The notes beneath the pieces were generated by a model that had not been told where the DNA came from, did not search any database, and saw only the letters and a program-made list of their open reading frames with translations. The position numbers and the translations under genes are program-made. DNA of 63,434 bases, counting the filler, from Octopus bimaculoides (lineage: Eukaryota), in assembly GCF_001194135.2 (NCBI RefSeq). It is 6 parts of 6 records of this genome, joined end to end, with 100 filler letters (N's around TTAATTAATTAA, not from the genome) between each part and the next. Parts side by side here need not be neighbours in the genome. Positions count along the whole stretch, not along the records: positions 39,329 to 63,434 come from NC_068991.1; 5 more parts are not named here. One strand, written 5' to 3'. This document shows, one piece after another, positions 39,396 through 63,434 of this stretch. The stretch's first letter is position 1, and every line of letters starts with the position of its first letter.

Positions 39396-39570
39396 TATGA
39401 CAGGCTTCTACACAGTTTCCGTCTACCAAATTCATTCACATGGCATTGGGTGGCAGCCTAGAGCTTATAGTGCAATAGAAGAAGACACTTGCCTAAGGTG
39501 TTGCACAGTGGGACTGAACCCAGAACCATACAAATGCAAAGTGGGCTTCTTCAACCCCACAGCCATGCCC
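39396..39570 (-). mobile_element. SINE family A, head half
   Basis: Homology to the family head. Confidence 0.75.
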
Positions 39571-41188: not shown

Positions 41189-42155
41189 NNNNNNNNNNNN
41201 NNNNNNNNNNNNNNNNNNNNNNNNNNNNNNNNNNNNNNNNNNNNNNNNNNNNNNNNNNNNNNNNNNNNNNNNNNNNNNNNNNNNNNNNNNNNNNNNNNNN
41301 NNNNNNNNNNNNNNNNNNNNNNNNNNNNNNNNNNNNNNNNNNNNNNNNNNNNNNNNNNNNNNNNNNNNNNNNNNNNNNNNNNNNNNNNNNNNNNNNNNNN
41401 NNNNNNNNNNNNNNNNNNNNNNNNNNNNNNNNNNNNNNNNNNNNNNNNNNNNNNNNNNNNNNNNNNNNNNNNNNNNNNNNNNNNNNNNNNNNNNNNNNNN
41501 NNNNNNNNNNNNNNNNNNNNNNNNNNNNNNNNNNNNNNNNNNNNNNNNNNNNNNNNNNNNNNNNNNNNNNNNNNNNNNNNNNNNNNNNNNNNNNNNNNNN
41601 NNNNNNNNNNNNNNNNNNNNNNNNNNNNNNNNNNNNNNNNNNNNNNNNNNNNNNNNNNNNNNNNNNNNNNNNNNNNNNNNNNNNNNNNNNNNNNNNNNNN
41701 NNNNNNNNNNNNNNNNNNNNNNNNNNNNNNNNNNNNNNNNNNNNNNNNNNNNNNNNNNNNNNNNNNNNNNNNNNNNNNNNNNNNNNNNNNNTATATATAT
41801 ATATATATATATATATATCTGAGTGGTTGGCGTTAGGAAGGGCATCCAGCTGTAGAAACTCTGCCAAATCAGACTGGAGCCTGGTGTTGCCATCCGGTTT
41901 CACCAGTCCTCAGTCAAATCGTCCAACCCATGCTAGCATGGAAAGCGGACGTTAAACGATGATGATGATGATGATGATGATATATATGTATATACATTTA
42001 CTTCTTTCAGTTTCTGCTACCAAATCTACTCACAAGGCTTTATTTGTTCTGAGGCTACAGTAGAAGACATTTACCCAAGGTGTCACTAGTGGGACTAAAC
42101 CTGGAACCATGTGGTTGGGAAGCAAGCTTCTTATCACACAACCACACATGCACCA
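41010..42155 (-). mobile_element. SINE family A whose internal microsatellite holds a gap and an RTE-tail insertion
   Basis: 3' half at 41010-41160, head half at 41995-42155. Confidence 0.65.
41821..41978 (+). mobile_element. RTE(X) 3'-end-derived repeat (family C) with (GAT)n tail
   Basis: gtggttggcgttaggaagggcatccagc...gcatggaaagcggacgttaaacgatgatgat; other copies at ~42330-42520(-), 43860-44145(+), 45620-45880(-), 55260-55540(-), 61650-61840(+). Confidence 0.85.
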
Positions 42156-42293: not shown

Positions 42294-42626
42294 ATACGGA
42301 GACAAGGAGAAAAACAATATATATATATATATCATCATTGTTTAATGTCCTCCTTCCATGCTGGCATCGGTTGCATGGTTTGACAGGAGCTGGCCAGGCA
42401 GGAGCCTGTGCCATCCTTCCGTGCCTGTTTTGGCATGGTTTTTACAGCTGCATGCCCTTCCAAATGCCAGCCACTTTACACTGTGGACTGGGTGCTTTTT
42501 AAGTGGCACCTGCGCTAGCAGGGTAACCAAGTAACTTTACAAGACAAGGGGTCTTTCACACACAAACACACACACAATATAAACCAATATTTTTTTTTAT
42601 TCTAATACATTGTGTATTTGTGTCTA

Positions 42627-43028: not shown

Positions 43029-43498
43029 TCTTTCACCCTCTTTATACATATTCATTCTCCTTAGTAGCCGATTTCTACAGCTTTGACCATATATGTTGAA
43101 CTATTTCACTCAATTGGTTTATATTTTGAAAGGTTTTAATCGAGGAAGGTTTACGTAATGGATGCATTTCTAATTATATATTACGCAAACCCGAAACATA
43201 CATGCTAAATGATTTCAGAAAATATTTTCAAATATTTCATTTGCCTACATTATTACAACTTACACGATTTGATGCCAGTACAAACGAGCCAGTCCAGACT
43301 TCACTTAAGTGGATACTCAAACAACAGCTTGGAGTAGTTTGTTGTATTTTCTCAAGTCATAAGTTCTGATACCATGTTACACTTCTAAGCAGGACATGAA
43401 ATTACATACATACATACATATATGGTTGCCAAGCAGTGGTGGGGGACAAACACACACACACACAATATGTATATATACAATGGGCTTCTTTCAGTTTC

Positions 43499-43730
43499 TT
43501 ATTTTTTTATTGCCCACAAGGGGCTAAACATAGAGGGGACAAACAAGGACAGACAAAGGGATTAAGTTGATTACATCGACCCCAGTGTGTAACTGGTACT
43601 TAATTTATCGACCCGGAAAGGATAAAAGGCAAAGTCGACCTTGGCGGAATTTGAACTCAGAATGTAACGGCAGACGAAATACCACTAACCATTTCGCCCG
43701 GCGTGCTAACGTTTCTGCCAGCTTGCTACC
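43499..43730 (-). mobile_element. SINE family B (B1 tail), full length, nested in SINE-A with 10-bp TSD
   Basis: Flanks tttcagtttc (43489-43498) and tttcaggttc (43731-43740). Confidence 0.9.
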
Positions 43731-44937
43731 TTTCAGGTTCTGTCTACCAAAATTCACGTACTGTTGCATGATTAATCAATTCCTGCCTATCATTTTAATT
43801 CTCTCTCCTCGCATTCTAATTTCATTACATCAAACTTAAGTAAAATCGCTGTCTTCCACACATACAGACTTGTCCTTCCAGGTGCCGGTGTCACTTAAAA
43901 AGCAGCCGTGCCAGTGCTGCATTGATGCACATGTGCAGGTGCTGTACAAATGCACCCATGCCAGTAGTACCCAGCACACTCCTCTGTTAAGTGGTCGCCA
44001 TTGGGAAGGAGTATCCAGCTGTAGAAGCCATGCCTCAACAGACACCTGAAGTCCGGACAGCTCCCTGCTAGACAGCTCTATGTCAAACTGTCCAACCCAT
44101 ACCAGCATGGAAAGCAGATGTTAAATGATGATGATGATGATGATGATTCTCGTTGGATTGACAGAATCATACATCATCAAACATAATGCTTTGTAATATC
44201 TAGATACAATACTGTACTTTCCAAGTTCAAATCTTGCCAAGGTGATCTTAGGCTGTCAGCAACCTTTCAGGGTTAATGAAATGAAGTTGAGTATTTGGGC
44301 TGAAGTAAACAACTAGTCTTCCCCCCTTCAAAACTATTGGCCTTAAACCTATATTAAAAACAACACTTTGTGTGCGTGTGAATGGGGTGGGTGTGTGAAT
44401 AAGAGTAAGTAAGAGTTTATGCAACCTAGTAATTCAATAGCAGCAGTTACCGTATGGCAAAAACAGCAATTAACACAATCTAGAAAAATAAGTGGTTTTT
44501 AGTGTGTTTGCCCTGTTTTGCATTTCTAAACAAACACTTAATAAAGGCGATCATAGCGGCTGAACAATCCTAGTTTAACCAGCCCTGAGAAGAAAGCTAA
44601 ATTTAATACACGCATACAGACAGACATAAACACATGCACATATGCATTTATACATGTCTGCATGTACATACAGATAAAGCATTGTCACGGTGTCAGTACA
44701 GCTTCAGTCATAGAGCAAAATGGTGCGAAAGTTTGCAATAAAGAAGTAGGCATGTAAATAGACAGACTAAGACACAATGTCCAACATGGGAAAAAAGTAC
44801 TATAGAAAGACGAAAAGGAAGAGAGGAAACCGGAGAGAAAATCTATGTATGTCCAACAAAGGACATTGTCTGGAGATATCAGATACTAACTGCAACTGTT
44901 TGTAATCAATCGTCATGGATCTATCAACATATAGATA

Positions 44938-44990
<53 letters not shown>

Positions 44991-46195
44991 GGTATGTATA
45001 TTGATGTGTATATATACATGTGCATATATTTATATGTATAGATATATATATGCGTATGTATATATACGTCAATGAACATGAACATCTGAGAAAGCCGACC
45101 ATCAGAAATTAATGTACAACAACTATAATAATAACAATAACAACAACAACGACAAAAACAACAATAATAATAAGAAGAACAACAACAACATTAACAATTA
45201 TGATCTAGATAAAGCAGGAATTGTTGGAGAATAAGAATATAGTATATAGTTGTATTTAAATACACAGTTGGTGAGATTTTCACTGGCAGTCTGTCCGTCC
45301 CTTTGATGCAGAGAATGGCAGGTTTTTAAGAAGAGGTTGTGTGTTCAGAGAGACATGAGAACAAAAGTCACAGACAAAAAAAGAAAAAGGAAAGGAAAGC
45401 CAAGGAAAAGAATAACTCGGTTAGAAGAATGCTTTTCATCACAATCTGCTGAAACAGGACTAAACAATAACACATATAAGTAGTGCAAACCTTGTTCACC
45501 TGGTATGAATTTTATGTTATATTTTATCTTTTGTTTGTTTCATTCATTGGACTGCAGCCATGCTGTAGGGGTGGGGGCAATGCATTGATAGGTGTTAATT
45601 GAAGAAACCAATGCCAGTACTTCTTCATCATCATCATCGTTTAATGTCCGTTTTCCATGCTGGCATGGGTTGGATGGTTTGACTGAGATCTGGCAAGCCA
45701 GATTGCTGCACCAGGCTCCAATCTGATCTGGCAGAGTTTCTACAGCTGGATGCCCTTCCTAATGCCAACCACTCTGAGAGTGTAGTGGGTGCTGCTTACG
45801 TGCCACCAGCACAGAAGCCAGTCAGGCGGGCCTAGCATCGATCACATTCAGATAGTGCTTTTTACGTGCCATTGGCACGAATTGAAAGAAAAAAAAAGAA
45901 AAATGAATTGTTGCACATTTGATTACACTAAGTTACAGGGATGTAAACGTATCAGCACTGGTTGTCAAATGATGGAAGTGGGATGACTAACTAACACACA
46001 CACATGTATGTTTGTATATGTGGCTGGCTTCCACACATTTTTGTCAACCAAATTCATTCACAAAGCATCGGTGGGCCTAGGGCTATAGTAGAAGACAGCT
46101 GCCGCACAATAGAACTGAACCTGAAACCATGTGATTGCAAAGCAAGCTTCTTAACTACACAGCCATGTCTGCACCCTTATTATGTTATATTATAC

Positions 46196-46590
46196 TAAGG
46201 CAGCTAGCACGCCGGGCGAAATGCTTAGCGGTATTTCGTCTGTCTTTATGTTCTGAGTTCAAATTCTGCTGAGGTTGACTTCGCCTTTCATCCTTTCAGG
46301 GTCAATAAAGTAAGTACCAGTTGCGTACTGGGTCGATCTAATCGACTGGCCCAACCTCCTGCAAAATTTCAGGCCTTGTACCTAGAAAAGCTTATTTAAG
46401 GCAGAATCGTTAGCGAATCGGTAAATGCTAAGCGGTATTTCGCCTGTCGCTACAATCTGAGTTCAAATTCCGCCGAGGTCGACTGTCTTTCTGCTTTTCC
46501 GGGTTGATAAATTAAGTACCAGTGAAACACTGGGGTCAGTGTAATTGACCAGTCTTCTCCCTCAAAATTTCAGGCCTTGTGCCTATAGCA
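46196..46590 (+). mobile_element. Two tandem SINE family B copies (B2 tail); a further copy at 47190-47405
   Basis: Same head and core, tail ...aaaatttcaggccttgtgcctaga. Confidence 0.85.
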
Positions 46591-46635
46591 GAAAGGACTA
46601 TGTTATATTATACTGTAAATATATAAAACCGATTG

Positions 46636-46671
<36 letters not shown>

Positions 46672-46890
46672 GTAGGAGAGTCATTATCATCATCATCATC
46701 ATCATCATCATTGTAAATGAGGCCTTAATGTGTTTGTATGTCAGCAGTTTTAGCATTAAACAATGAATTTATTTTAAAGTCCATGCCTCTTTCATGAATG
46801 TATATTTTTAATACATTCCTTTCCCAGTCAAGCATAAACCAAATGGGTTTATAGTATTCTTTATGGTATTACGAACAATGTTAAAATAAT

Positions 46891-47082
46891 AAAATATTCT
46901 ACCTGTTTTATGTTCAAACAGGCCATACCTGGTCTCTCACACCTACCCTACAATGTCATAGTAAAAATAAACATTCCCATCATCAAAATCACAAAGGTAC
47001 AAGAAAATGCATGATTAATTCAAAACAATGTTAATATATAAGCATTGCATTTGAATGAATAATCTGAATGCTAAAGAATTAA
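46891..47082 (+). mobile_element. piggyBac-like MITE, left end missing
   Basis: Homologous to 49536-49755, ends ...ctaaagaa|TTAA. Confidence 0.7.
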
Positions 47083-47990
47083 TGTGAGAAAATCCCAAAC
47101 TACCAATAGTTACTGGGTTATTTTCATGGGCAAGATTCCATTCTATTAAAAATGTAAATACCAATCTTGGTTTTAACATTTTACCAAAATAAGGCACGAG
47201 CTAGCAGAAACTTTAGCACACTGGGTAAAATGCTTAGAGGTACTTCGTCTGTCTTTATGTTCTGAGTTCAAATTCCGCCGAGGTCGACTTTGCCTTTCAT
47301 CCTTTTGAGGTTGATAAATTAAGTACCAGTTACGTACTGGGATTGAACTAATCAACTGGCCCCCTTCCCCAAAATTTCAGGCCTTGTGCCTAGAGTAGAA
47401 AAGAACATTTTACCAAAATGCTTGCTTGCTAAAAAGTACATCTCATCCAAAAATATCATGTACAAATTTATTAACTTAGCAAACCTATGCAAACAGATGA
47501 AAGTTTGTGAAATTTTAGAAGATAAATCAAAAAGAGCAACAACAAAAAAACTGATTTGTTTCTGCTCTCTGAAATTTTAATCTTATATTGTTGCATTCTC
47601 CGAATATTTAAACAGATCAAAAGAAGACATTCAATCAGCCATACAATACGCAATTTCTTTGATACTGTAAAAGCAACTTTTTTTCTTTCTTTCCCACTGA
47701 AAAAAGATAGCAGGTCAAATAAAAGGTAGATCAGAATGGTAGTCTTGATGAAAGAAAGATCAAAAATGGAACGGTAAGTCTTGATAAAAGGAAGATCAAA
47801 TTGGTAGTCTTGATAAAAGGTAGATGAGATCATAAATATTCAGGTTTTTCATTGGTTAGCAACAAGGTATGGCATCAAAAATAAAAGAGCGGGAAAAAAA
47901 TATGGAAATTTGGGGCTTTTATGAAGATGGTATATCAAGGAAAATTAGATATGTTAATGTCTTCACATAGAATTAAATTCACTTTTCTGA

Positions 47991-48028
<38 letters not shown>

Positions 48029-48088
48029 NNNNNNNNNNNNNNNNNNNNNNNNNNNNNNNNNNNNNNNNNNNNNNNNNNNNNNNNNNNN

Positions 48089-48123
<35 letters not shown>

Positions 48124-49226
48124 CATCCATTATTTGATATCACTTTCAGAAATTATAGAATTCTAGCGAAATTCTTCATTTCGGAAGGCAAGTAGCTGGT
48201 TACAGTCGAGAGTTGGAGTCCCAATGGTCCAATGGTGATTAAGATATGGTAACCTTTACTGAAGGTCAACCGATAAATATACAGCAACTTTGCAATGTGG
48301 TGGTGTGGGCATCAATAAAAGTCAACAAGTTCAACTGCCACAAGCACATCAAAGGCTCTAAACTTGCATGGTTTAATACGAAACCTTAGAAGACAAAAAC
48401 GCACTCATCAGAAAATAAAAAAATAAAACAGCTGAAGTCAATACTTGTACCATATATGTGTTTGTGTGTGTATTTATGTATGTATGTGCATGTATGTATG
48501 TAGACATAAACACACACATACATATATATACATATATCGGTACACACATATTTTATAACAACAAAATGGATATATGTATGTATTATATACGCATACATAT
48601 ATGGAATTCCCAAAAGTGGTTATCAATATCATTTCAGCTCGGAATTATAGATAGACAGCTAGTTTGTAAAATGTACTCCAAACTAAGAACCTAACATGAT
48701 GCCATTCACAACAGTTAGAATTTATAGATCAACAAAAATTGCAAACCTTTGACTGGCTAACCTCTCTATCTCTCCCAGAGGGCATTTTACATCTGCTTTC
48801 CTCATCTTTAAAAAGTTATGCTATGTTCACTGCAAAGATCAATGTCATCTTATATAACTAGTAGTCATCAGTAGATTTGCAATTCCCATAAAGGATAAAG
48901 TATAACCATTGAACAAAAAAGCACATTCAAAATAATCAAAGGAAAAAGAAAGCAAAGAGAAGAAATTTTACTTTTTTTGTATCATTTCTCATCAATTTGA
49001 CTAAAAAAAAAAATGGCTACCTCACAAGCAGCAAATGAAATTACAACTGCTTTTATTTATTTTTTTTTGTTTTACCCCTTGTTATTCTACACCTGACAGT
49101 TTGACATACCTTTTAAAACATCCAGCTATATTTCAAATCTTTCAAATTCATTAAAAATCATATCAACACATACAAAACCTACCATACTATGATTCCTTAC
49201 CATACTAGCTTCACTATGCTCCACAG

Positions 49227-49847
49227 CAGTACTTCTCAAATGGGGTCTGTATGACTGCTGGGGATCTATGTAAAATTTTGTGGGGTCCACACAAATGAAA
49301 TAATACATTGGGAATCCACATTAGTATTGAAAAGGTTCATGAATAAATTTTGCTTCTAGATATATTTATTGCAAGAAACAGCTAAGGTTTCTTTCTTTAA
49401 TATTTTACTTAGTTTAACATGTTTCCAGTCATTAAAACATGTTCTCTCAATGAGTGTTGTTGAAAACTTATACAAGTAAACATGTGGAAAACAATATAGG
49501 AATTTAGAAAGACATTTTAAACATTGTTAATTTAACCCTTTAGCATTTAATCTGGCCATACCTGGCCCAAATATTCTTCCTGTTTTATGTTCAAACTAAG
49601 CTGATCTGGTTTCTCACACCTGTACTATAATGTCATTATAAGAATAATTAGTCGCATAACCTAAATTCCAAAGCTACGAGATAGTGCATGATTCATTTAA
49701 AACAATGTGAATGAATAAATATTACATTTGAGAGAAAAATCTGAATACTAAAGGATTAAAATGGTTATGGGGGGGGGGGTCCACCAGAATCAAATAATAA
49801 TCAAAAAGCTTCATAAATAAATTTTTAAAAATGGCTGAGAACCACTG
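49227..49847 (+). mobile_element. hAT-Charlie-like MITE containing a piggyBac-like MITE
   Basis: TIRs CAGTACTTCTCA / TGAGAACCACTG; 8-bp flanks ctccacag / cactacag (6 of 8 match). Confidence 0.7.
49536..49755 (+). mobile_element. piggyBac-like MITE, complete
   Basis: TTAA|CCCTTTAGCATT ... AATACTAAAGGA|TTAA. Confidence 0.8.
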
Positions 49848-50077
49848 CACTACAGAAATAAAAATTGTGAAGTATCCACTCAAATGTGCTTCGCAACTCA
49901 ACTAGTCAAATGACTCAGTTGAACAGAAAGGAAATTATTTAAGAGATTATAAGGCCACACCTTGTCAAATGGTGTTGTTTTTCTTTATCAAAAGGATCCA
50001 CCTTCTGAAATTAATAGGCAATAAATTTACTTAAGCGGTGTGGGTATTGTGTGGAAACAGTGGTGCACAGGTTTTAA

Positions 50078-50327
50078 CACATTTTTGACATTAACCTGCC
50101 CAATATCTTCCCTGGTTTTATGACACAAACTTAACTGCTTTAAAGTGATCTAATTTTTTAAAAGAAAAAGAAAACCTTCCATCAAAATTTTATGTTAATT
50201 TATGTTCTAAACTCCAGCTAAATAATGACAAAGTTATTTTGTTATTTTGTAATTTCTTCACGATTTTTAAAATTAATTGAAAGAACAGCAGTGTATGTAT
50301 TTTAACAAAAGCATGACAACGAAAGGG
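50078..50327 (+). mobile_element. Second piggyBac-like MITE family
   Basis: Ends ...acgaaaggg; homologous to 10924-11748. Confidence 0.6.
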
Positions 50328-50389
50328 TTGGTACAATGTTAATTTCAATTTAGTTTGAATCATACAAATATGGTTTCAATTTTCAACAG

Positions 50390-50960
50390 ACATAGCTCTG
50401 TGACTTAGAAGCTCGCTTAATAACCATGTGTTTTCAGATTCAGTCCCACTACGCGACACCTTGAACAAATGTCTTCTACTATAGCCTCAGGCCGACCAAT
50501 GAGTGAATTCAACAGATGGAAACTGTGTGGAAGCCTCAAAAATATATGTATGTGTGCATTTGTGTATTTCCTCCACCATTATTTGACAACTGATGCTGGT
50601 TTGTTTTTGTCACTGTAACCCAGCGATTCATCAAAAAGTGCTGATAGAATAAGTACCAAACTTTAACAATGAGTGAATTCGATAGATGGAAACTGTTTGG
50701 AAGCCCAAAATATATGTGTGTGTGTGTGTGTGTATGTGTGTGTGTTTGTGTATTTGTGTTTATCCCCCATCATTGTTTGACAATAGGTGTTTGTTTTCGT
50801 CCCTGTAACTTAGCATTTCAGCAAAAAAGACTAATAGAATAAGTGCCAAACTTTATAAATAAAAAGAAAAAAGTATAGGGGCTGATTTGTATGACTAAAC
50901 ATTTCATTCAAGACAGTTTCCCACCATGGCGGCAGTCCAATAATTAAAACAAGTAAAAAG
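50390..50960 (+). mobile_element. SINE family A (older) with internal tandem duplication
   Basis: Module tgagtgaattc...aataagtaccaaacttt occurs at 50500-50669 and 50670-50860. Confidence 0.75.
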
Positions 50961-50984
50961 ACTGATGATAAAAGATTCCGTATT

Positions 50985-51520
50985 CAAGTGGCTGTGTGGT
51001 AAGTAGCTTGCTTACCAACCACATGGTTCTGGGTTCAGTCCCACTGTGTGACACCTTGGAAAAGTGTCTTCTACTGTAGCCTCAGGCCGACCAAAACCTT
51101 GTGAGTAGATTTGGTAGACAAAAACTGAAAGGCGGCGAGCTGGCAGAATCGTTAGCACGCCGGGTGAAATGATTAACGGTATTTCGTCTGCTGTTACGTT
51201 CTGAGTTCAAATTCCGCCAAGGTCGATTTTCCCTTTCATCCTTTCAGGGTCAATAAATTAAGTACCAGTTATGCACTGGGATCGATGTAATCGACTTAAT
51301 CCGTTTGTCTGTCCTTCTTTGTCACCTCTATGTTTAGCCACTTGTGGGCAATAAAGAAATAAGAAACTGACAACCAATGCTGGTGTGTTTACATCCCCAT
51401 AACTTAGTGGTTCGGCAAAGGAGACCGAATAAGTCCTTGGGTCGATTTCTTCGACTAAAGGCATTGCTCCAGCATGGCTGCAGTGAAATGACTGAAACAA
51501 ATAAAAGAATAAAAGAATAA
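50985..51520 (+). mobile_element. SINE family A with nested full-length SINE family B (51131-51362)
   Basis: Flanks aaaactgaaa (51121-51130) and gaaactgaca (51363-51372). Confidence 0.9.
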
Positions 51521-52050
51521 ACCAAAATGAGCCTTATATTCCATGCATTTGGTGTTCCATAAAGTAATACTAGTGATTATGCTGAAGATAATCCCTACAA
51601 CAACATTCTTTACCTGCAAATATTAGCTTTGAGCCTCATCAAAATAAATCAATAAAATGAAAACACACTATGTACTTATGTCCATATATACAACGCAATA
51701 TATATATATATATATACATACTGTATATGTAACAAGAAATGTGATTTATGATCTGTTATTGCTGGTAACACCGTACAACTGAATTTTGATGGAACATAAA
51801 TCTAGCTATTAATCCATTATTATGTACAACAACCAGATAAGAATGCATCAGCTATAACTTAATGGCTTCATGAAGTTTACAGATTTTATAGCTAATCACT
51901 GTGATGGTTGAATTTGTAAGCCTAGTTCAGTGTGACTCGAGTTAATAGATTCATCATACCGAAGTGACTAATTCTGTTCAATATTTTAGAGATGAGGAAT
52001 TCTGTGCATTATTTACATTGGACGGATATGTGTCTTCATCTTGTTTGTTG

Positions 52051-55241: not shown

Positions 55242-55760
55242 ATTTACATCACAAAATAACAACATCATTGTCATCATTGTCATCATTGTCAACTCCATCA
55301 TTGTCATCTTCATCATCATTATTTAACGTCCTTTTTCCAAACTGGTATGGGTTGGATGGTTTGACAGGATCTGGCATACTGCAGGGCTGCATCAAGCTTC
55401 AAATATCAGCTTTGGCATGGTTTGTGTGATTGGATGCCCTTCCTAATGCTGACTGCTTTACAGAGTGTACTGCATGTCTTTTTGAGGGGTTTTGTGTTGG
55501 TTTTTTTTTGTTACTTTTTGTGCCACCAGCCTGTGTGAGGTCACCAAGTAACATGTAAAACTGAAAGAGAACAAGGAAAACCCTGTTCTTTTTCTGTCTT
55601 GAAAGAGTCTTTTTGGAGTCTTTATGCCAGGTTTTGAAAGGCTGATGCATGATAGAGATCTCTTGCTAAAGTGAAGATATATGGCTATCCCACTGTTTAC
55701 TGTTAAATTAAACTAAAGTAAAAAAAAGAAGAAAAACCAAAAAGCTAACCGACATATAGA

Positions 55761-56100: not shown

Positions 56101-56989
56101 ATGTATACTATCAAGTCCTGTGTATACTATCTGTAGAAAAGATGGAATACCTTTGATCATCGATCAACAACAGCAACAACAGCAACAGCAGAGCCAGGGT
56201 TTTGAACCTATGCCCTTTGGCTTAAAAGTCAAGCACAGCGTCCTACAAGTTTTGGTTTCATAGACCTGTGGAGGTCTGCTAACTTTGTTTGTGAGATATG
56301 GGAAATGAAAATTTGTTTGAGAGAAATTCCCACAGGGGCAGATATATGAAAGGCCTATATTTTTCTTCTTAATGCAATTTATTTTATATGATTTAGCCAA
56401 TCAATATTAATTATTATTGATTTTTTTTTTCTTTTCAGATTTCAACAGTTTATTATTATATACAGTGGAATATATTTTGATGTTGGGTGAATTAGTTTTA
56501 TGTTTTCTCCTTTATCTGTATCTCTAAAAGAATTAAGTTGGAATTCTCTCAAATCACATTGTGTAAAATAGCTTCAGAGAAAGAGCGAGATCTATAGCAA
56601 TAGGGAACATCCTGAAGTGGAAATAGTGTGGAGGTGGGGAGGGCGGGGAGTTATAAAAAGATTGAGAAATATTGATACAATACAATGATGATACTAATTA
56701 TTGTTGTCACACATAATGATTTAAGAAGAATAGAGTGATATCAAGTATTTAAATAGAGAAAAATAAAGCAGAGAACAAAATGCTTTCAACTTTTATAAGT
56801 GAATGTTATATTTGAAAAGGTAATTACAAATAATATTTTTTAAATGGAATGTAAATATTTAATAAATCACTAAGCTTGAGAAAACAAGGAAAAAACTATA
56901 CACAAAGAATTTATATACATATACATATATATATATAAGACAGAGTGAGAGAGGCATACATATATGTTTATATGTACTTATGTATATGT

Positions 56990-57108
<119 letters not shown>

Positions 57109-57232: not shown

Positions 57233-57289
57233 TATATTTTGTAAATAAGTGTATATAACCTGTTATTTCTGTCTATTTTATATGTGTGT

Positions 57290-57835
57290 GTGGGTGTGTG
57301 TGTCTATGTGTGTTCCTCACCACCACTTGACAACCGCTGTTGGTATGTTTATGTCCCTGTAACTTAACAGTTCAGCAAGAGAGACTGATAGATTGAGTAC
57401 CAAGCTTATGAAAACAAAAAAAGTCCTGGGGTTGATTCCTTCAACTAAAATTCCTCAAGGCAGTGCCGCTGCATGGCCACAGTCTAATGACTGAAACAAA
57501 TAAAAGATAATAAACATTATAGAAAAATCAACCCCAGGACTTATTCTTTGTAAGTCTGGTACTTATTCTATCAGACCCTTTCGCTGAACCACTAAGTTAT
57601 GGGGATGTAAAGAAACCAACATCGGTTGTCAAGCGATGATGGCGGTACAAACACACACCTACACACACATATACATATGACAAGCTTCTTTCAGTTTCCT
57701 TCTACAAAATCTACTCACAAGGATTAATGGTTGGCCCAAGGCTATAGTATATGACACTTGCCCAAGGTGCCATGCAGTGGGACTGAAACTGGAACCATGA
57801 GGTTTGTAAGCAAGCTACTTACCACACAACCATGT
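57290..57835. mobile_element. Two SINE family A copies tail-to-tail (57290-57515 +, 57524-57835 -)
   Basis: Homology to the family on opposite strands. Confidence 0.85.
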
Positions 57836-58583: not shown

Positions 58584-59371
58584 TTGTGTATGTATGTTTA
58601 AATATGTGTATACTTATATAATTATTACCGCCATTGTTATTGTTGAATCCCTGAAATAGTTGCTGTAAACTATTTTAAGACTTCATTGAATTAGTAGTAG
58701 AGAAAAAAACAAACAAACAAAAAAAAAGGACAAAACAAACAAAGAACTATGACAGCCCCGTCACCAAGACATTGACAAAGGAGAAAAGAGAATTTTTACT
58801 CAGCACGCAATCCAATTTAGGTTGAAAAACAGATCACGCAGGAAGAAAGAACAAACCAAAGAAACGTGCAAAAAGTACTGTCTTAAAAACAAAAACAAAA
58901 AATTCTTGTATTTTTTTTTTAATTTCAGTATGATATTTATTATTATTGTTTTTTATTTCTTATTTTAGAATTTATCGTTCATGTCAAAAAAAGAAAAAGA
59001 AAAAAATGGTAACAGAAGTATGGGTATATCTGTAGAAAAGTGACAATATGGGAGGGAAAGTCTATGGGAAAGGTTTCAGAGCAAATGCGTTATTTAATGT
59101 CTTCGAATGTAAACAAAAGATTTAGTAAAGTAAAAAGTATAAAAAAACAAACAAACAAACACAAAAAAAAAACAGAGATATCCTTGGTGGTTTATATGTT
59201 ATATACACCCACCACAAGTGAGGAAAACATTGCTCATGTATATCTACACACACAAGCAAGCGTATACATATATATATATATATATATACATGCATATATA
59301 TATATATACATGTATATATAGAAATATGTATATATATATATATATTTGTATATATACATGTATATATACAA

Positions 59372-59438
<67 letters not shown>

Positions 59439-59825
59439 TATATATACATATATATGCATGTATGTGTACATATATATACATACACACATATATATGTGTA
59501 TGTATATACATATAAATACACACGCGTGTGTGTGTGTGTGTGTGTGTGTGTGATTGGAGCACTTAAGAGAACATTAAGGTAATAAAAAGTGGATAGATTT
59601 ACAAAGTATACTCAGCAGGGGGCGGGTTGTACCCAATCAAGCTACAAGTGTAAAAGATCAGGCTTTAATTTATCAGCAACACTCCTAGAAAGCCATTTAA
59701 GAATTGCATTTGGTTCGTGCTCATCCCATCCCTCTCTCCATTCTCTATTCCTGTCTCAAATTATTACACATTAACAGTTATATATTGCCATTAATACAGC
59801 TGCATTTCTTCTGGGTTTTTTTTAT

Positions 59826-60180: not shown

Positions 60181-60939
60181 TGACACTTTATTTCATGTTG
60201 CTCCAGTTCAATCAGCTGACAAAGAAGCATAGTACCTGTATTATCATTGTGTCATGCTGAATCTCCCTGAGAACTACATTGAGGGTATGTGAGTCTGTGG
60301 AGTGCTCAGCCACTTGGACATTAATTTCAAAAACAAGCCATTCTGTTGACTGGATCAACTGGAACCGTCATTGTTGTAAATGACAGAATGCCAGTATTTA
60401 CAGAACACATGATTCAATATACCTGAAATATTTCTGATGTAGATAAATCTACAGTTATTTATTTTGAAAGATGTTGTGGAGATTACAGACAATGTGAAAA
60501 CATTCTATTGTTCTTTTATGTAAACAGAAAAATAATTGAGAACCTTCATACAGATCTGTTTTGATGCTGACAGCTTTATTATCAGAGAAGTTCCAATATA
60601 CTTTGCCTACCCAGAGAAAATATCATCTATTATAATTTAGCATAATCTAAAATATACTATATATAATTTAGATTATATATAGTAATCTAAACTGCTATAT
60701 ATAGTAGGAACTTATAAGAACATAATATGAACAGTCTTCCTTAGCATATAATACGTTAGCTACTTCAGCACTATATATTTATAAAGAACACACCATATAT
60801 CTTGCTGTTACCCCTTCTCACCTTACCCCTGCCTTTGAAGGTTTTGAACCCTCTTCTGATTACCCTATTGCTTATTCCCACCCTGATTGTCCCACCTTCA
60901 TTCCCCCACAAGGCTTATGTACAAGAAGCCACATTGGCC

Positions 60940-61330
60940 CAGCTCATCCCTCTGACTGATACATGCCTATATCAGCAACTCCAACAGTCCGTCTTCATTG
61001 CATTGAACCATCCTTGTGCTTTTGAAATTCCTCCTCTCCAGTGCATCTCCTCTACCCTCTTCACTCTTATCAACTGCCGGCCATCACTCTCCCTCACCTT
61101 ATGTTACTCTTGTAGGGTCCAGCCCACAAGCTCCTACACTAACCCTTATTCACAGGCCTTTTTTAGAACATCATTCCTCTGGGATCGTCTCCCTGCTCAT
61201 GTCTTTCTTGCTGGTGATGAATGACAGCTGTTCAAACAGGCTTTTAATGGCACCAAGATCACTGGTCTTGGAAGAACTGCAAAAGTCATGGACATAGACC
61301 CTGTCTCCAGACTTGGCAAGTAATAATAAG
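60940..61330 (+). pseudogene. CR1/Jockey-like LINE ORF2 C-terminal remnant
   Basis: ..YSQAFFRTSFLWDRLPAHVF..QLFKQ resembles the SFFPRTSRLWNSLP..FK terminus of such RTs. Confidence 0.5.
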
Positions 61331-62041
61331 ATAAGAACTGGGGGACAACTTGGTCACCAAAACCTGTGAGGGCTCTGCAGGTGAATGACCGAAAACAGTA
61401 AAAGAACTTTTCTAGCATATAGGAGTCCACTTTTGTAGGTCATTCCTCTTATTTTTGTATATATATATACACACATACATATGGTATTTTATAAGCTTAA
61501 AGCTTACAAGCAATCACCATGCATTGTCTAAGGAAAAGAATGTAATATTGAGGCATATAAGCCCTTGACAGAAATAAGTAGGGTTGTCCATACACATGGG
61601 ACTTGGACTCACACCTTTATGTTTTTGCATACCACTACACCACTAAAAAAAAAAGCATCCCGCACAGTCTGTAAAGTGGTTGGCATTACGAAGGGCATCC
61701 TGTGGTAGAAATCATGCCGAAACAGACAACACAGCTTGGTGCAGTCTTCTGACTTGCCAGCACCAGTTGAATCATCCGATTTATGCCAGCGTAGAAAAAA
61801 CAAGTATTAAATGATGATAATGATGCTGATGACGATGACAATGATATATACAAAATTTATATATATATATATATNNNNNNNNNNNNNNNNNNNNNNNNNN
61901 NNNNNNNNNNNNNNNNNNNNNNNNNNNNNNNNNNNNNNNNNNNNNNNNNNNNNNNNNNNNNNNNNNNNNNNNNNNNNNNNNNNNNNNNNNNNNNNNNNNN
62001 NNNNNNNNNNNNNNNNNNNNNNNNNNNNNNNNNNNNNNNNN

Positions 62042-62850: not shown

Positions 62851-63285
62851 CAGGATGCGATGGGTAAATTGTCACCAGTTTATATTTTTTCATTTCGTGC
62901 ATGCACCTTGTTTGTTTCTGAGTTTGTCAATAACACAGTAGGGTCAGTGAGAAAAACAGCACCATGACACAATTCACTCTGCCAGAAATTTGGAAACGAC
63001 ATGTTTTACTGCTTGGCATTCACACTGGAAGTTCCAATACAAACAGATAGTGAACACACAGAACAACTATTGGCTTACTGTGTTCCAAAAACATGTGCCA
63101 AGAGTGATAAAAATCAAACATCCAGTCAACATCATGGAGTGATCACTAATGATGGTGACGTTATGCCTCCATTCATCTTCCCACATGGCCTCAAACTCAA
63201 CATGGAGGCCTACTTCAAGTATCTGGAGGAGGTAGTGCTGCCCTGGGTCAAGAGGGTGACTGCTGGAAGACCCTATGTCTGGTGG
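62851..63285 (+). mobile_element. Tc1-like transposon, internally deleted
   Basis: TA|CAGGATGCG end; N-terminal MTQFTLPEIWKRHVLLLGI fused to GVITNDGDVMPPFIFPHGLKLN..LPWVKRVTAGRPYVW. Confidence 0.85.
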
Positions 63286-63434
63286 TGGGGGGACCAAACA
63301 TAAACACAGATACAAGGCATTGACGGACCAGCAGAAAACACTTGCCCAAAGTGCTGCATAGTAGGACCAAACCTCAAAGCACATGGTGGCAAAGCAGGTT
63401 TCTTAACCACACACCTAAGTCTGAACATATATAT

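What the first reader, a model, noticed from the sequence alone, without database searches (positions are those of the whole stretch)
43489..51372. SINE-B inserted twice at the same 10-bp site, in the same orientation, inside SINE-A
Both full-length B1-tailed copies (43499-43730 minus, 51131-51362 plus) are flanked by duplications of SINE-A's GAAACTGAAA (gaacctgaaa/gaaactgaaa; aaaactgaaa/gaaactgaca), directly after ggtagac. Either a sequence-specific SINE that parasitises another SINE, or a composite A+B element that spread as a unit. Known: many Tx1-clade LINEs are target-specific for other repeats, which fits the Tx1-like tail on B1. B2-tailed copies here are not at this site.
Basis: partly seen in the sequence, partly recalled or inferred. 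Interest (0 to 1): 0.75.

Follow-up and report, generated by a model that had tools for sequence, protein, structure and literature searches.

The report
Octopus SINE twice in one SINE spot
Two copies of a short octopus retrotransposon sit at exactly the same nucleotide of an older, very common retrotransposon; this is real and not chance, but the element also inserts elsewhere, so it is most likely an insertion hot spot or a copied nested pair, not a strictly site-specific parasite.

Summary
Two 235-bp B1-tailed SINE-B copies (43499-43733 minus; 51128-51362 plus; 90% identical) lie in SINE-A's orientation directly after A's GGTAGACN. Each is flanked by a duplicated GAAACTG. The secure target-site duplication is 7 bp, not 10, because the following AAAG is also B's own 5' end. 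Chance is below about 1e-4. It is not a large segmental duplication, because homology between the two loci stops after 261 nt.

Strict site specificity is refuted. The only other B1 copy whose DNA I could fetch (Octopus vulgaris, locus L001 10142-10376) sits in non-repeat DNA with a clean 19-bp duplication. Another copy, read through a translated contig (P0008), sits inside a SINE-B head.

Three or four of the five known B1 3' flanks start with GAAA(C). I therefore favour a hot spot: a weak preference for nicking before GAAAC, plus AAAG microhomology with B's 5' end, hitting the genome's commonest instance of that motif (confidence about 0.45).

One insertion later copied together with its A flanks (a composite family, or a local copy) is not excluded (about 0.4 together). 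The "Tx1-like tail" could not be tested. No octopus genome was searchable, so a genome-wide flank census is still needed. Interest is modest.

The parts
43499..43733 (-). SINE-B, B1-tailed copy 1 (235 nt; AAAGGTAGCAAGCTGG...GGGCAATAAAAAAATAA)
   Evidence: Read directly. BLAST gives 90% identity to copy 2. Three-way alignment with the O. vulgaris copy.
43734..43740 (-). Upstream target-site duplication of copy 1 (GAACCTG), preceded by A's tttggtagaca (43741-43751)
43492..43498 (-). Downstream target-site duplication of copy 1 (GAAACTG). It can be read as 11 bp (43488-43498, GAAACTGAAAG) because A continues with AAAG.
43424..43491 (-). Remainder of copy 1's host: SINE-A positions about 153-245 (aaagaagccc...(TG)n...ctgcttggcaacc). 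The DNA beyond it is unrelated to A.
   Evidence: Local alignment to an intact O. vulgaris SINE-A scores 33, against a shuffle maximum of 16. BLAST.
50975..51120 (+). Head of copy 2's host SINE-A, up to ...gatttggtagaca. It is 88% identical to A positions 11-155 of the intact O. vulgaris copy.
51121..51127 (+). Upstream target-site duplication of copy 2 (AAAACTG)
51128..51362 (+). SINE-B, B1-tailed copy 2 (235 nt; AAAGGCGGCGAGCTGG...GGGCAATAAAGAAATAA)
51363..51369 (+). Downstream target-site duplication of copy 2 (GAAACTG)
51370..51522 (+). 3' part of copy 2's host SINE-A (A positions about 240-410). About 87 bp of A (aaagaagcc...cgcttg) are missing between 51369 and 51370.
   Evidence: Alignment of A copies. 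BLAST to the O. vulgaris A copy covers positions 236-409.
48029..48088 (.). Assembly gap between (TG)n and (TA)n. It is not part of either element, but it separates the contigs that carry the two copies.

Best explanation
SINE-B with the B1 tail is an ordinary SINE that moves on its own and has tRNA-promoter-like boxes. It is copied into the genome by a partner LINE through target-primed reverse transcription. It is not site-specific.

Its insertions do appear to favour a first-strand nick just 5' of GAAAC on the top strand (bottom strand 5'-GTTTC|). Its own 5' end, AAAG, can pair with a target that carries AAAG a few bases further on when the second strand is joined.

SINE-A's ...GGTAGACG|GAAACTG|AAAG|AAGCC... 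offers both features, and SINE-A is present in very many copies. So separate B1 insertions land again and again on the same nucleotide of A, in A's orientation, with the same short duplication. On this reading the two window copies are two such events in two different resident A copies: one a fragment, the other a whole A with an internal 87-bp gap.

Shown: the junctions, the duplications, the empty sites in other A copies, the solo copy elsewhere, and the equal distances between the B1 copies. Inferred: the GAAAC preference (from five flanks only), the role of the AAAG microhomology, and that the two events were independent.
For: 1. B1 moves by itself. The O. vulgaris copy at L001 10142-10376 lies in non-repeat DNA, with a 19-bp duplication gtatattttcaatgttttc / gtatatgttcaatattttc.
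2. Target-derived GAAAC begins the 3' flank in both window copies (A's own GAAACTGAAAGAAGCC continues without a break). It also does so in P0008, where ...WAIKK is followed by I-ENLARWVRCLEAFRLSLCFEFKF. That is a SINE-B head read in frame from its GAA ACG TTA GCA. P0001's flank back-translates to RAARTG.... A flank starting GAAA by chance has probability of roughly 0.006 at this base composition.
3. B starts with AAAG and A has AAAG right after GAAACTG. This explains why both events show the same duplication length, although the solo copy has 19 bp.
4. The three B1 copies form a star: private changes number 10, 12 and 13. Only one change shared by copies 1 and 2 could be polarised, and it is at a CpG. 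So there is no sign of a shared history after leaving the master.
5. The two hosts differ in structure, and homology between the loci ends after 261 nt.
6. A possible B2-tailed copy at the same A site (P0016...YVRWKLKG|HELVE) would be a third, independent hit. The match is weak, with shuffle p of 0.02-0.14.
Against: - Only five B1 flanks are known. Two are inferred from translated sequences, and three of the five are not in SINE-A.
- With a preference for the 5-mer GAAAC alone, the A site should take perhaps 5-10% of insertions. Two out of two in one window would then still be unlikely (1% or less). A stronger, longer motif preference must be assumed.
- A's own tail has a similar GAAAC...AAAG motif (GAAACAAGTAAAAG) that is not hit here.
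- Both hosts share the CG-to-CA change just before the duplication, and both B1 copies share CCGAGG-to-CCAAGG. Both are CpG sites, but this is what common descent would also give.
- The same duplication length in both copies is also what one single event would give.
- The two A-site copies are neighbours on one scaffold, while all three copies from elsewhere lie outside A.
Confidence: 0.45

Rival explanations
1. Composite family. B1 inserted once into one SINE-A copy, and that A-B1-A block became a source element. It was transcribed from A's promoter and retrotransposed through A's tail. Both window copies descend from it, so the shared site, orientation and duplication are inherited, not re-made.
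For: - The junctions are identical to the nucleotide and the duplication length is the same in both copies, whereas the solo copy has 19 bp.
- The base before the duplication is A, not G, in both hosts, and B1 position 93 carries a shared CpG change.
- Copy 2 looks like a full composite, from A's 5' end to A's tail.
- Copy 1 could be a 5'-truncated composite.
- Composite and dimeric SINEs are a well-known outcome of nested insertion (established knowledge).
Against: - Copy 1 lacks A's 3' 165 bp, which such a composite would need in order to be retrotransposed. Copy 2 lacks 87 bp that copy 1 has. So at least two later deletions must be assumed.
- There are no shared derived changes beyond two CpG sites. 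About one shared CpG loss is expected by chance.
- No A-to-B junction peptide (GFGRRKLK|GGELAE) appears among about 35 B-head ORFs with a visible 5' flank, apart from the doubtful, B2-tailed P0016. Clustering at 50% identity and the lack of an ATG in that A frame bias against seeing such peptides.
- I found no significant outer duplication around copy 1's block.
Confidence: 0.3
2. Local DNA-level copy. There was one B1 insertion into a nearby SINE-A. Soon afterwards a block of about 350 bp (A 135-152, B1, A 146-245) was copied in inverted orientation about 7 kb away. Templated double-strand-break repair or gene conversion into a pre-existing A fragment could do this.
For: - The two A-site copies are neighbours on one scaffold, while the three B1 copies seen elsewhere are not in A.
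- Copy 1's block has neither end of A and no convincing outer duplication, as expected for a DNA fragment that was not retrotransposed.
Against: - The copies differ by 10%, as much as either differs from the O. vulgaris copy. The copying would therefore have to follow the insertion almost at once.
- The two copies are on different contigs joined across a gap, so even their proximity rests on scaffolding.
- Such templated copies of several hundred bp are rare (established knowledge).
Confidence: 0.1
3. Strictly sequence-specific SINE. B1 is driven by a target-specific (for example Tx1-like) LINE whose endonuclease recognises the SINE-A sequence, so that essentially all B1 copies sit at this site.
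For: - Two of two full-length B1 copies in the window are at one site in one orientation.
- Target-specific Tx1-clade LINEs that live in other repeats are known (established knowledge).
Against: - The solo O. vulgaris copy lies in non-repeat DNA, with a 19-bp duplication that has no GAAAC.
- P0008's copy is in a SINE-B head.
- P0001's flank is not A-like.
- Duplication length varies between 7-11 bp and 19 bp.
Confidence: 0.03
4. Coincidence or assembly artefact. Either two unrelated insertions happen to share a site, or a short-read assembler joined A and B wrongly.
For: The scaffold has many gaps, and both elements are very abundant repeats.
Against: - The chance estimate is below 1e-4.
- The two loci differ at 24 positions and in their flanks, so they are two real places.
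- The shared sequence at the joins (4-7 nt) is far too short to mislead an assembler.
- Both junctions carry duplications, as real insertions do.
Confidence: 0.02

Closest known systems
Insertion hot spots of LINE-driven SINEs inside other repeats (for example L1/Alu insertion at TT|AAAA, giving recurrent Alu-in-Alu and Alu-in-L1 nesting; 5'-junction microhomology in L1 integration)
   Same: - A weak nick-site preference combined with a very abundant repeat that carries the motif gives repeated hits at the same position and orientation.
- The target is duplicated on both sides of the insert.
- Microhomology between the target and the insert's 5' end fixes the 5' junction.
   Different: - The motif here is GAAAC (bottom strand GTTTC|), not TTTT|AA.
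- The SINE has no poly(A). It ends in ...GCCCCTTGTGGGCAATAAAGAAATAA, with a small hairpin before an A-rich tail, which is more like SINEs of 'stringent' LINE partners.
- The preference rests on only five flanks.
Target-specific non-LTR retrotransposons (Tx1L in the Tx1D DNA transposon of Xenopus; Keno, Mutsu and others of the Tx1 group; R1/R2 in rDNA)
   Same: A retroelement found at one defined sequence of another multicopy element, always in one orientation.
   Different: - Those elements are found almost only at their target. B1 is also found in non-repeat DNA and in a SINE-B head.
- No partner LINE was identified, so the Tx1 link is untested.
Composite or dimeric SINEs formed by nesting (Alu from two 7SL-derived monomers, B1-dID, Twin, and the SVA type of composite)
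   Same: One short retroelement lies inside or next to another, with a possible later spread of the pair as one unit.
   Different: - Only two copies are known here. Their outer (A) parts are not collinear.
- No outer duplications or family-specific substitutions were found.
tRNA-derived SINEs of octopus (OK, OR1, OR2 of Ohshima and Okada 1994, cited in PMC4758252; the SINE-rich octopus genomes in PMC9115989)
   Same: - Short elements of 230-410 bp in an octopus genome, with internal promoter-like boxes, target duplications and subfamilies that differ in their tails.
- They are very abundant and often embedded in transcripts and gene models.
   Different: I could not compare sequences with those named families because no repeat library was on hand. 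Whether A or B equals one of them is not known.

Membership tests
LINE-mobilised SINE (for SINE-B, B1 tail) | Short, non-coding, dispersed copies bounded by target-site duplications of variable sequence | tested here: met
   There are three DNA copies of 235 nt, 88-91% identical. Their duplications are 7-11 bp (twice) and 19 bp at different loci, in two assemblies. No open reading frame with a family match was found.
LINE-mobilised SINE (for SINE-B, B1 tail) | Head derived from a tRNA, with pol III A and B boxes | tested here: inconclusive
   - Box-like motifs can be read: TTAGCACGCCGGG near position 25 and GAGTTCAAATTCC near position 78.
- ARAGORN finds no tRNA.
- Rfam gives no tRNA match at E up to 1.
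- My loose box patterns found no B box and matched the A-box pattern only at positions 7-15, not at that motif.
LINE-mobilised SINE (for SINE-B, B1 tail) | 3' tail shared with a partner LINE | not testable with these tools
   No LINE with this tail is in the 24-kb piece or in L001. No repeat library or octopus genome could be searched. B1 and B2 tails share a hairpin with loop CUUGU and changes on both sides of the stem, which fits recognition by an RT but does not name the LINE.
Sequence-specific (Tx1-like) retroelement | (Nearly) all copies at one target sequence | tested here: not met
   Two of five known flanks are at the A site. L001's copy is in non-repeat DNA with a 19-bp duplication, P0008's copy is in a SINE-B head, and P0001's flank is not A-like.
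Sequence-specific (Tx1-like) retroelement | Tail or coding homology to a Tx1-clade LINE | not testable with these tools
   No LINE sequence was available to compare. Pfam on four window ORFs gave nothing.
Composite SINE family (A-B1-A) | Many copies with the same composite architecture, bounded by outer duplications at unrelated loci | tested here: inconclusive
   Only two copies are known and their A parts are not collinear. The outer duplication of copy 1's block is not significant. Copy 2's host abuts another A's tail, so its outer duplication cannot be read.
Composite SINE family (A-B1-A) | Inner and outer parts share one history (shared private substitutions) | tested here: inconclusive
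   The B1 parts form a star with the O. vulgaris copy. Only about 18 nt of A are shared by both loci, with one shared CpG change.

The most novel reading that the evidence does not exclude
B1's partner LINE might recognise an extended motif (about ACR|GAAACTGAAAG) that exists almost only inside SINE-A. A large share of all B1 copies in octopus genomes would then sit at this one nucleotide of SINE-A. That would be a SINE that uses another SINE as its main landing pad while keeping some off-target insertions. It would be a semi-specific, SINE-on-SINE parasitism of a kind I have not seen described for cephalopods.
Probability: 0.2. Interest if true: 0.6.

Novelty: new member of a known kind. Interest (0 to 1): 0.3.

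Why it matters
Octopus genomes are unusually rich in SINEs, and these are embedded in many brain transcripts (PMC9115989). Several annotated octopus "proteins" found here are in part SINE-B read-through (P0002-P0005).

Knowing whether a SINE subfamily has a preferred landing sequence would help in three ways:
- dating and ordering the SINE bursts, because nested insertions give relative ages;
- identifying the partner LINE and its nicking preference;
- cleaning up repeat libraries, in which a frequent A-B1-A nesting could be mistaken for a separate family.

If the site preference were strong, it would be a neat natural case of one non-autonomous element living mainly inside another. If it is only a hot spot or a copied nested pair, it is ordinary transposon biology.

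Tried and rejected
1. Exact-pattern scans for the B1 tail and for the conserved B head in the metagenome, viral and GTDB collections all gave 0 hits. No octopus DNA is there.

2. Protein-database route to more copies:
- The B1-tail reverse-frame peptide gave only P0001 (O. bimaculoides, UniRef), which has no contig on record.
- A 1181-aa concatenation of SINE-derived peptides was a mistake.
- The third search gave P0003, and through it the one useful locus, L001.

3. The exhaustive profile search gave 47 B-head ORFs. They are cluster representatives at 50% identity, so A-hosted copies may be collapsed. I therefore did not use them as a frequency estimate.

4. P0007, P0008 and P0016 lie on Logan contigs of 1.1-1.5 kb. 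The contig look-up accepts only window proteins or hits of the first search tool, so I did not fetch them.

5. A candidate outer duplication around copy 1's block (GTACGTGAATTT / GTATGTAATTT) is no better than shuffled sequence. I dropped it.

6. A weak degenerate A head upstream of copy 1 was tested: only 18 nt match.

7. All Rfam matches in the piece are microsatellite artefacts (mir-297, mir-598 and others, all below gathering score). ARAGORN found nothing. Pfam found nothing for four ORFs.

8. A full-text search for four diagnostic DNA strings found no paper.

9. Using the host A's divergence from consensus to date the host against B1 was rejected as a test. A composite master could have formed in an already old A. 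In any case host and insert are equally diverged, at about 88% identity to the O. vulgaris copies.


Full report
WHAT THE PIECE IS

Places 39329-63434 are AT-rich animal DNA with five assembly gaps. The piece is crowded with short repeats. Peptides translated from those repeats match only octopus proteins: O. bimaculoides in UniRef and O. vulgaris in NCBI. SINE-A is an element of about 410 bp. SINE-B is about 210-235 bp, has one head, and carries one of two tails (B1 or B2).

THE OBSERVATION

- Copy 1 (minus strand): tttggtagaca | GAACCTG | AAAGGTAGCAAGCTGG...GGGCAATAAAAAAATAA | GAAACTG | aaagaagccc...
- Copy 2 (plus strand): tttggtagaca | AAAACTG | AAAGGCGGCGAGCTGG...GGGCAATAAAGAAATAA | GAAACTG | acaaccaatg...

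Intact SINE-A copies read GGTAGACGGAAACTGAAAGAAGCCCGTCG at this place, with nothing inserted. In the window these are at 39427, 42020, 50511, 50681 and 57706. In O. vulgaris they are at L001 1501 and 11366. So each B1 copy is an insertion into A with a duplicated target. Both lie at the same nucleotide and in A's orientation.

The two B1 copies are 89.8% identical.

B's true 5' end is AAAGGC. This is shown by a solo copy with a clean 19-bp duplication and by B2 copy 47197, which has a clean 14-bp duplication. The secure duplication is therefore the 7-mer GAAACTG.

The B2-tailed copies in the piece are elsewhere and have ordinary duplications.

The assembly gap at 48029-48088 sits between a (TG)n and a (TA)n run, kilobases from either copy. 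It affects only the linkage and spacing of the two copies, which lie on different contigs.

IS IT CHANCE OR A DUPLICATION?

The piece has 8-9 such A sites in 21.8 kb of read sequence. A random oriented insertion hits one with probability about 2e-4. Two random insertions sharing a homologous position and orientation in any repeat family is below 1e-4.

It is not a large segmental or inverted duplication. Homology between the two loci is 261 nt (43491-43751 against 51110-51370) and then stops.

The hosts differ. Copy 2 sits in a whole SINE-A: head from about 50975, 88% identical to an intact O. vulgaris A, and tail to 51522. That A lacks about 87 bp right after the duplication. Copy 1 sits in a mere fragment of A, with 11 nt plus the duplication upstream and A positions 146-245 downstream. 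The DNA beyond is unrelated.

LOOKING FOR MORE COPIES

No octopus genome was searchable. Exact-pattern scans of the metagenome, viral and prokaryote collections found nothing. I therefore used reading frames that run through the SINE.

- A reverse frame of the B1 tail found P0001 (O. bimaculoides). Its residues before the tail (MMYHF) back-translate to RAARTGRTACATCAT, which is not SINE-A beyond a possible GAAA. Its DNA is not on record.
- A B-head frame found P0003, an O. vulgaris 'hypothetical protein' that is simply flank plus B1. Its locus, L001 (OX597819.1:6084910-6105260), gave 20 kb of O. vulgaris DNA.
- L001 holds one B1 copy (10142-10376). It is 88-91% identical to the window copies and lies in non-repeat DNA. 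It is bounded by gtatattttcaatgttttc / gtatatgttcaatattttc, 19 bp with two mismatches. The SINE-A copies in L001 have empty sites.
- An exhaustive profile search gave 47 more ORFs that contain a B head.
- Among these, P0008 carries a B1 tail (...IPLSVLVCSLYL...FWAIKK) followed at once by I-ENLARWVRCLEAFRLSLCFEFKF. That is a SINE-B head read in frame from its GAA ACG TTA GCA. So this B1 copy sits inside another B, just before GAAACG.
- None of about 35 visible 5' flanks reads like A's ...GFGRRKLK, except perhaps P0016 (YVRWKLKG|HELVE, with a B2-type tail). Its similarity is weak.
- These are cluster representatives at 50% identity, so I do not use them as frequencies.

WHAT THIS SHOWS

First, B1 is a free-standing SINE that can insert outside A. 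The strict 'sequence-specific parasite of SINE-A' reading is refuted.

Second, the flanks are not random. In copies 1 and 2 and in P0008 the 3' flank begins with GAAAC that clearly belongs to the target, because it continues A or B without a break. P0001 is compatible with GAAA. Only L001 (GTAT) is not. In target-primed reverse transcription the first nick lies at the left edge of the duplication, so this points to nicking of the bottom strand at 5'-GTTTC|.

Third, A carries AAAG straight after GAAACTG, and B begins with AAAG. Four bases of microhomology are just what fixes 5' junctions in LINE-type integration (established knowledge for L1). This would explain why both A-site events have the same duplication length, although the solo copy has 19 bp.

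Because SINE-A is so abundant, it must hold most genomic instances of GAAACTGAAAG. Even a moderate preference would then look like targeting of A.

INDEPENDENT EVENTS OR COMMON DESCENT?

A three-way comparison of copy 1, copy 2 and the O. vulgaris copy gives 10, 12 and 13 private differences. Where the B2 consensus can serve as outgroup, only one difference is shared by copies 1 and 2, and it is a CpG. About one shared CpG loss is expected by chance.

So the two window copies are no closer to each other than to a copy from another assembly. Any shared history after leaving the master was short. This fits independent insertion. It also fits a composite master formed from a fresh B1, or a local copy made soon after insertion.

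The A sequence common to both loci is only about 18 nt, with one shared CpG change.

Both models need the same number of extra deletions to explain the hosts. A candidate outer duplication around copy 1's block is not significant.

The counts (2 of 2 here, 0 of 3 elsewhere) favour a fairly strong site preference or a composite class over a rare local copying event. They cannot separate the first two.

VERDICT

I put about 0.45 on independent insertions into a favoured motif, 0.3 on a composite A-B1-A lineage, 0.1 on a local DNA-level copy, and a few per cent on strict specificity, chance or artefact.

The 'Tx1-like tail' is untested, because no LINE with this tail is in the 44 kb available.

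The B1 and B2 tails share a small hairpin with the same loop (B1 GCCC-CUUGU-GGGC; B2 AGGC-CUUGU-GCCU). Three of its four pairs are changed on both sides (the energies alone are not significant). This is the kind of 3' structure that 'stringent' LINE reverse transcriptases recognise. It suggests that the two tails come from related partner LINEs.

COMPARISON WITH KNOWN THINGS

The case works most like the known hot spots of LINE-driven SINEs inside other repeats, with a different motif and without poly(A). It resembles target-specific Tx1/R-type elements only in appearance, because the defining feature (nearly all copies at the target) was tested and not met. It could be the seed of a composite SINE, but that architecture is not shown.

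It is a new instance of a known kind of phenomenon and is of modest interest. A genome-wide flank census and a look at the orthologous loci would settle it within hours on any octopus assembly.

Noticed in passing
window 43499-43530, 51331-51362, 47375-47399; L001 10345-10376: The B1 and B2 tails differ in sequence but keep a 4-bp hairpin with the same loop: B1 GCCC-CTTGT-GGGC and B2 AGGC-CTTGT-GCCT. Three of the four pairs are changed on both sides. An A-rich end follows. This looks like a conserved 3' recognition stem-loop inherited from related partner LINEs.
   Followed up: partly
window 41818-41966, 42331-42513, 43963-44135, 45630-45900, 55312-55472, 61675-61821: There is a third abundant short repeat ('C', ...catcatcatcgtttaacgtccgctttccatgctagcatgggttggacg...). 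Twice it is nested inside SINE-A copies: in A's internal microsatellite at about 41966, and in A's tail at 45630-45900. So SINE-A is a frequent host for other elements too.
   Followed up: partly
window 50398-50958, abutting 50975: A SINE-A copy has an internal partial duplication: two ...gaattc-a-agatggaaactgt-tggaagcc modules at 50511 and 50681. Its tail runs directly into the head of copy 2's host, giving a head-to-tail A-A arrangement.
   Followed up: no
window 57264-57507 (+) and 57525-57832 (-): Two SINE-A copies lie tail to tail in inverted orientation, only about 18 bp apart.
   Followed up: no
window 46205-46390 and 46400-46600: Two B2-tailed SINE-B copies lie head to tail. The first is 5'-truncated and abuts the 5' end of an inverted SINE-A (46165).
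   Followed up: no
SINE-A copies at window 39413-39427, 46038-46060, 50511, 50681 against 42005-42020, 57692-57706, 43734-43748, 51113-51127: SINE-A has two variants just at the insertion site: ...GAAACTGAAAGAAGCC and ...GAAACTGTGTGGAAGCC. Both B1 hosts are of the AAAG variant. None of the four or five TGTG-variant sites is occupied. The numbers are too small to test.
   Followed up: partly
P0003 (L001 10001-10351); P0002, P0004, P0005 (O. bimaculoides, UniRef): Several annotated octopus proteins are partly or wholly SINE-B read-through. P0003 is flank plus B1. P0004 (EF-hand protein) and P0005 (MFS protein) end in the B-head frame ...ELAE-LA-R-K...SEFKFR-GRLCLSSF. P0002 starts with SINE-A and SINE-B frames. 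These are either exonised SINEs or gene-model artefacts.
   Followed up: partly
P0016 (Logan contig, 1.1 kb): A B2-tailed SINE-B ORF whose upstream residues (...SKYVRWKLK|GHELVE) resemble A's ...SGFGRRKLK| right up to the junction. This may be a B2 copy at the same SINE-A site. The similarity is weak (shuffle p 0.02-0.14), and its DNA could not be fetched.
   Followed up: partly
window 46637-46712, 48463-48550, 56957-57031, 59230-59560 and others: All Rfam 'microRNA' matches in the piece (mir-297, mir-598, mir-466, mir-3149 and others) fall on microsatellites. One is a palindromic (ATG)n/(CAT)n at 46637-46712. All are below the gathering scores, so they are artefacts of low complexity.
   Followed up: yes
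window 63001-63303 (+): A 100-aa ORF (...HGVITNDGDVMPPFIFPHGLKLNMEAYFKYLEEVVLPWVKRV...) looks from memory like the C-terminal part of a Tc1/mariner-type transposase. Pfam gave no match, so this is unconfirmed. The ORF at 60802-61224 (...FFRTSFLWDRLP...) likewise recalls a LINE C-terminus but has no match.
   Followed up: partly
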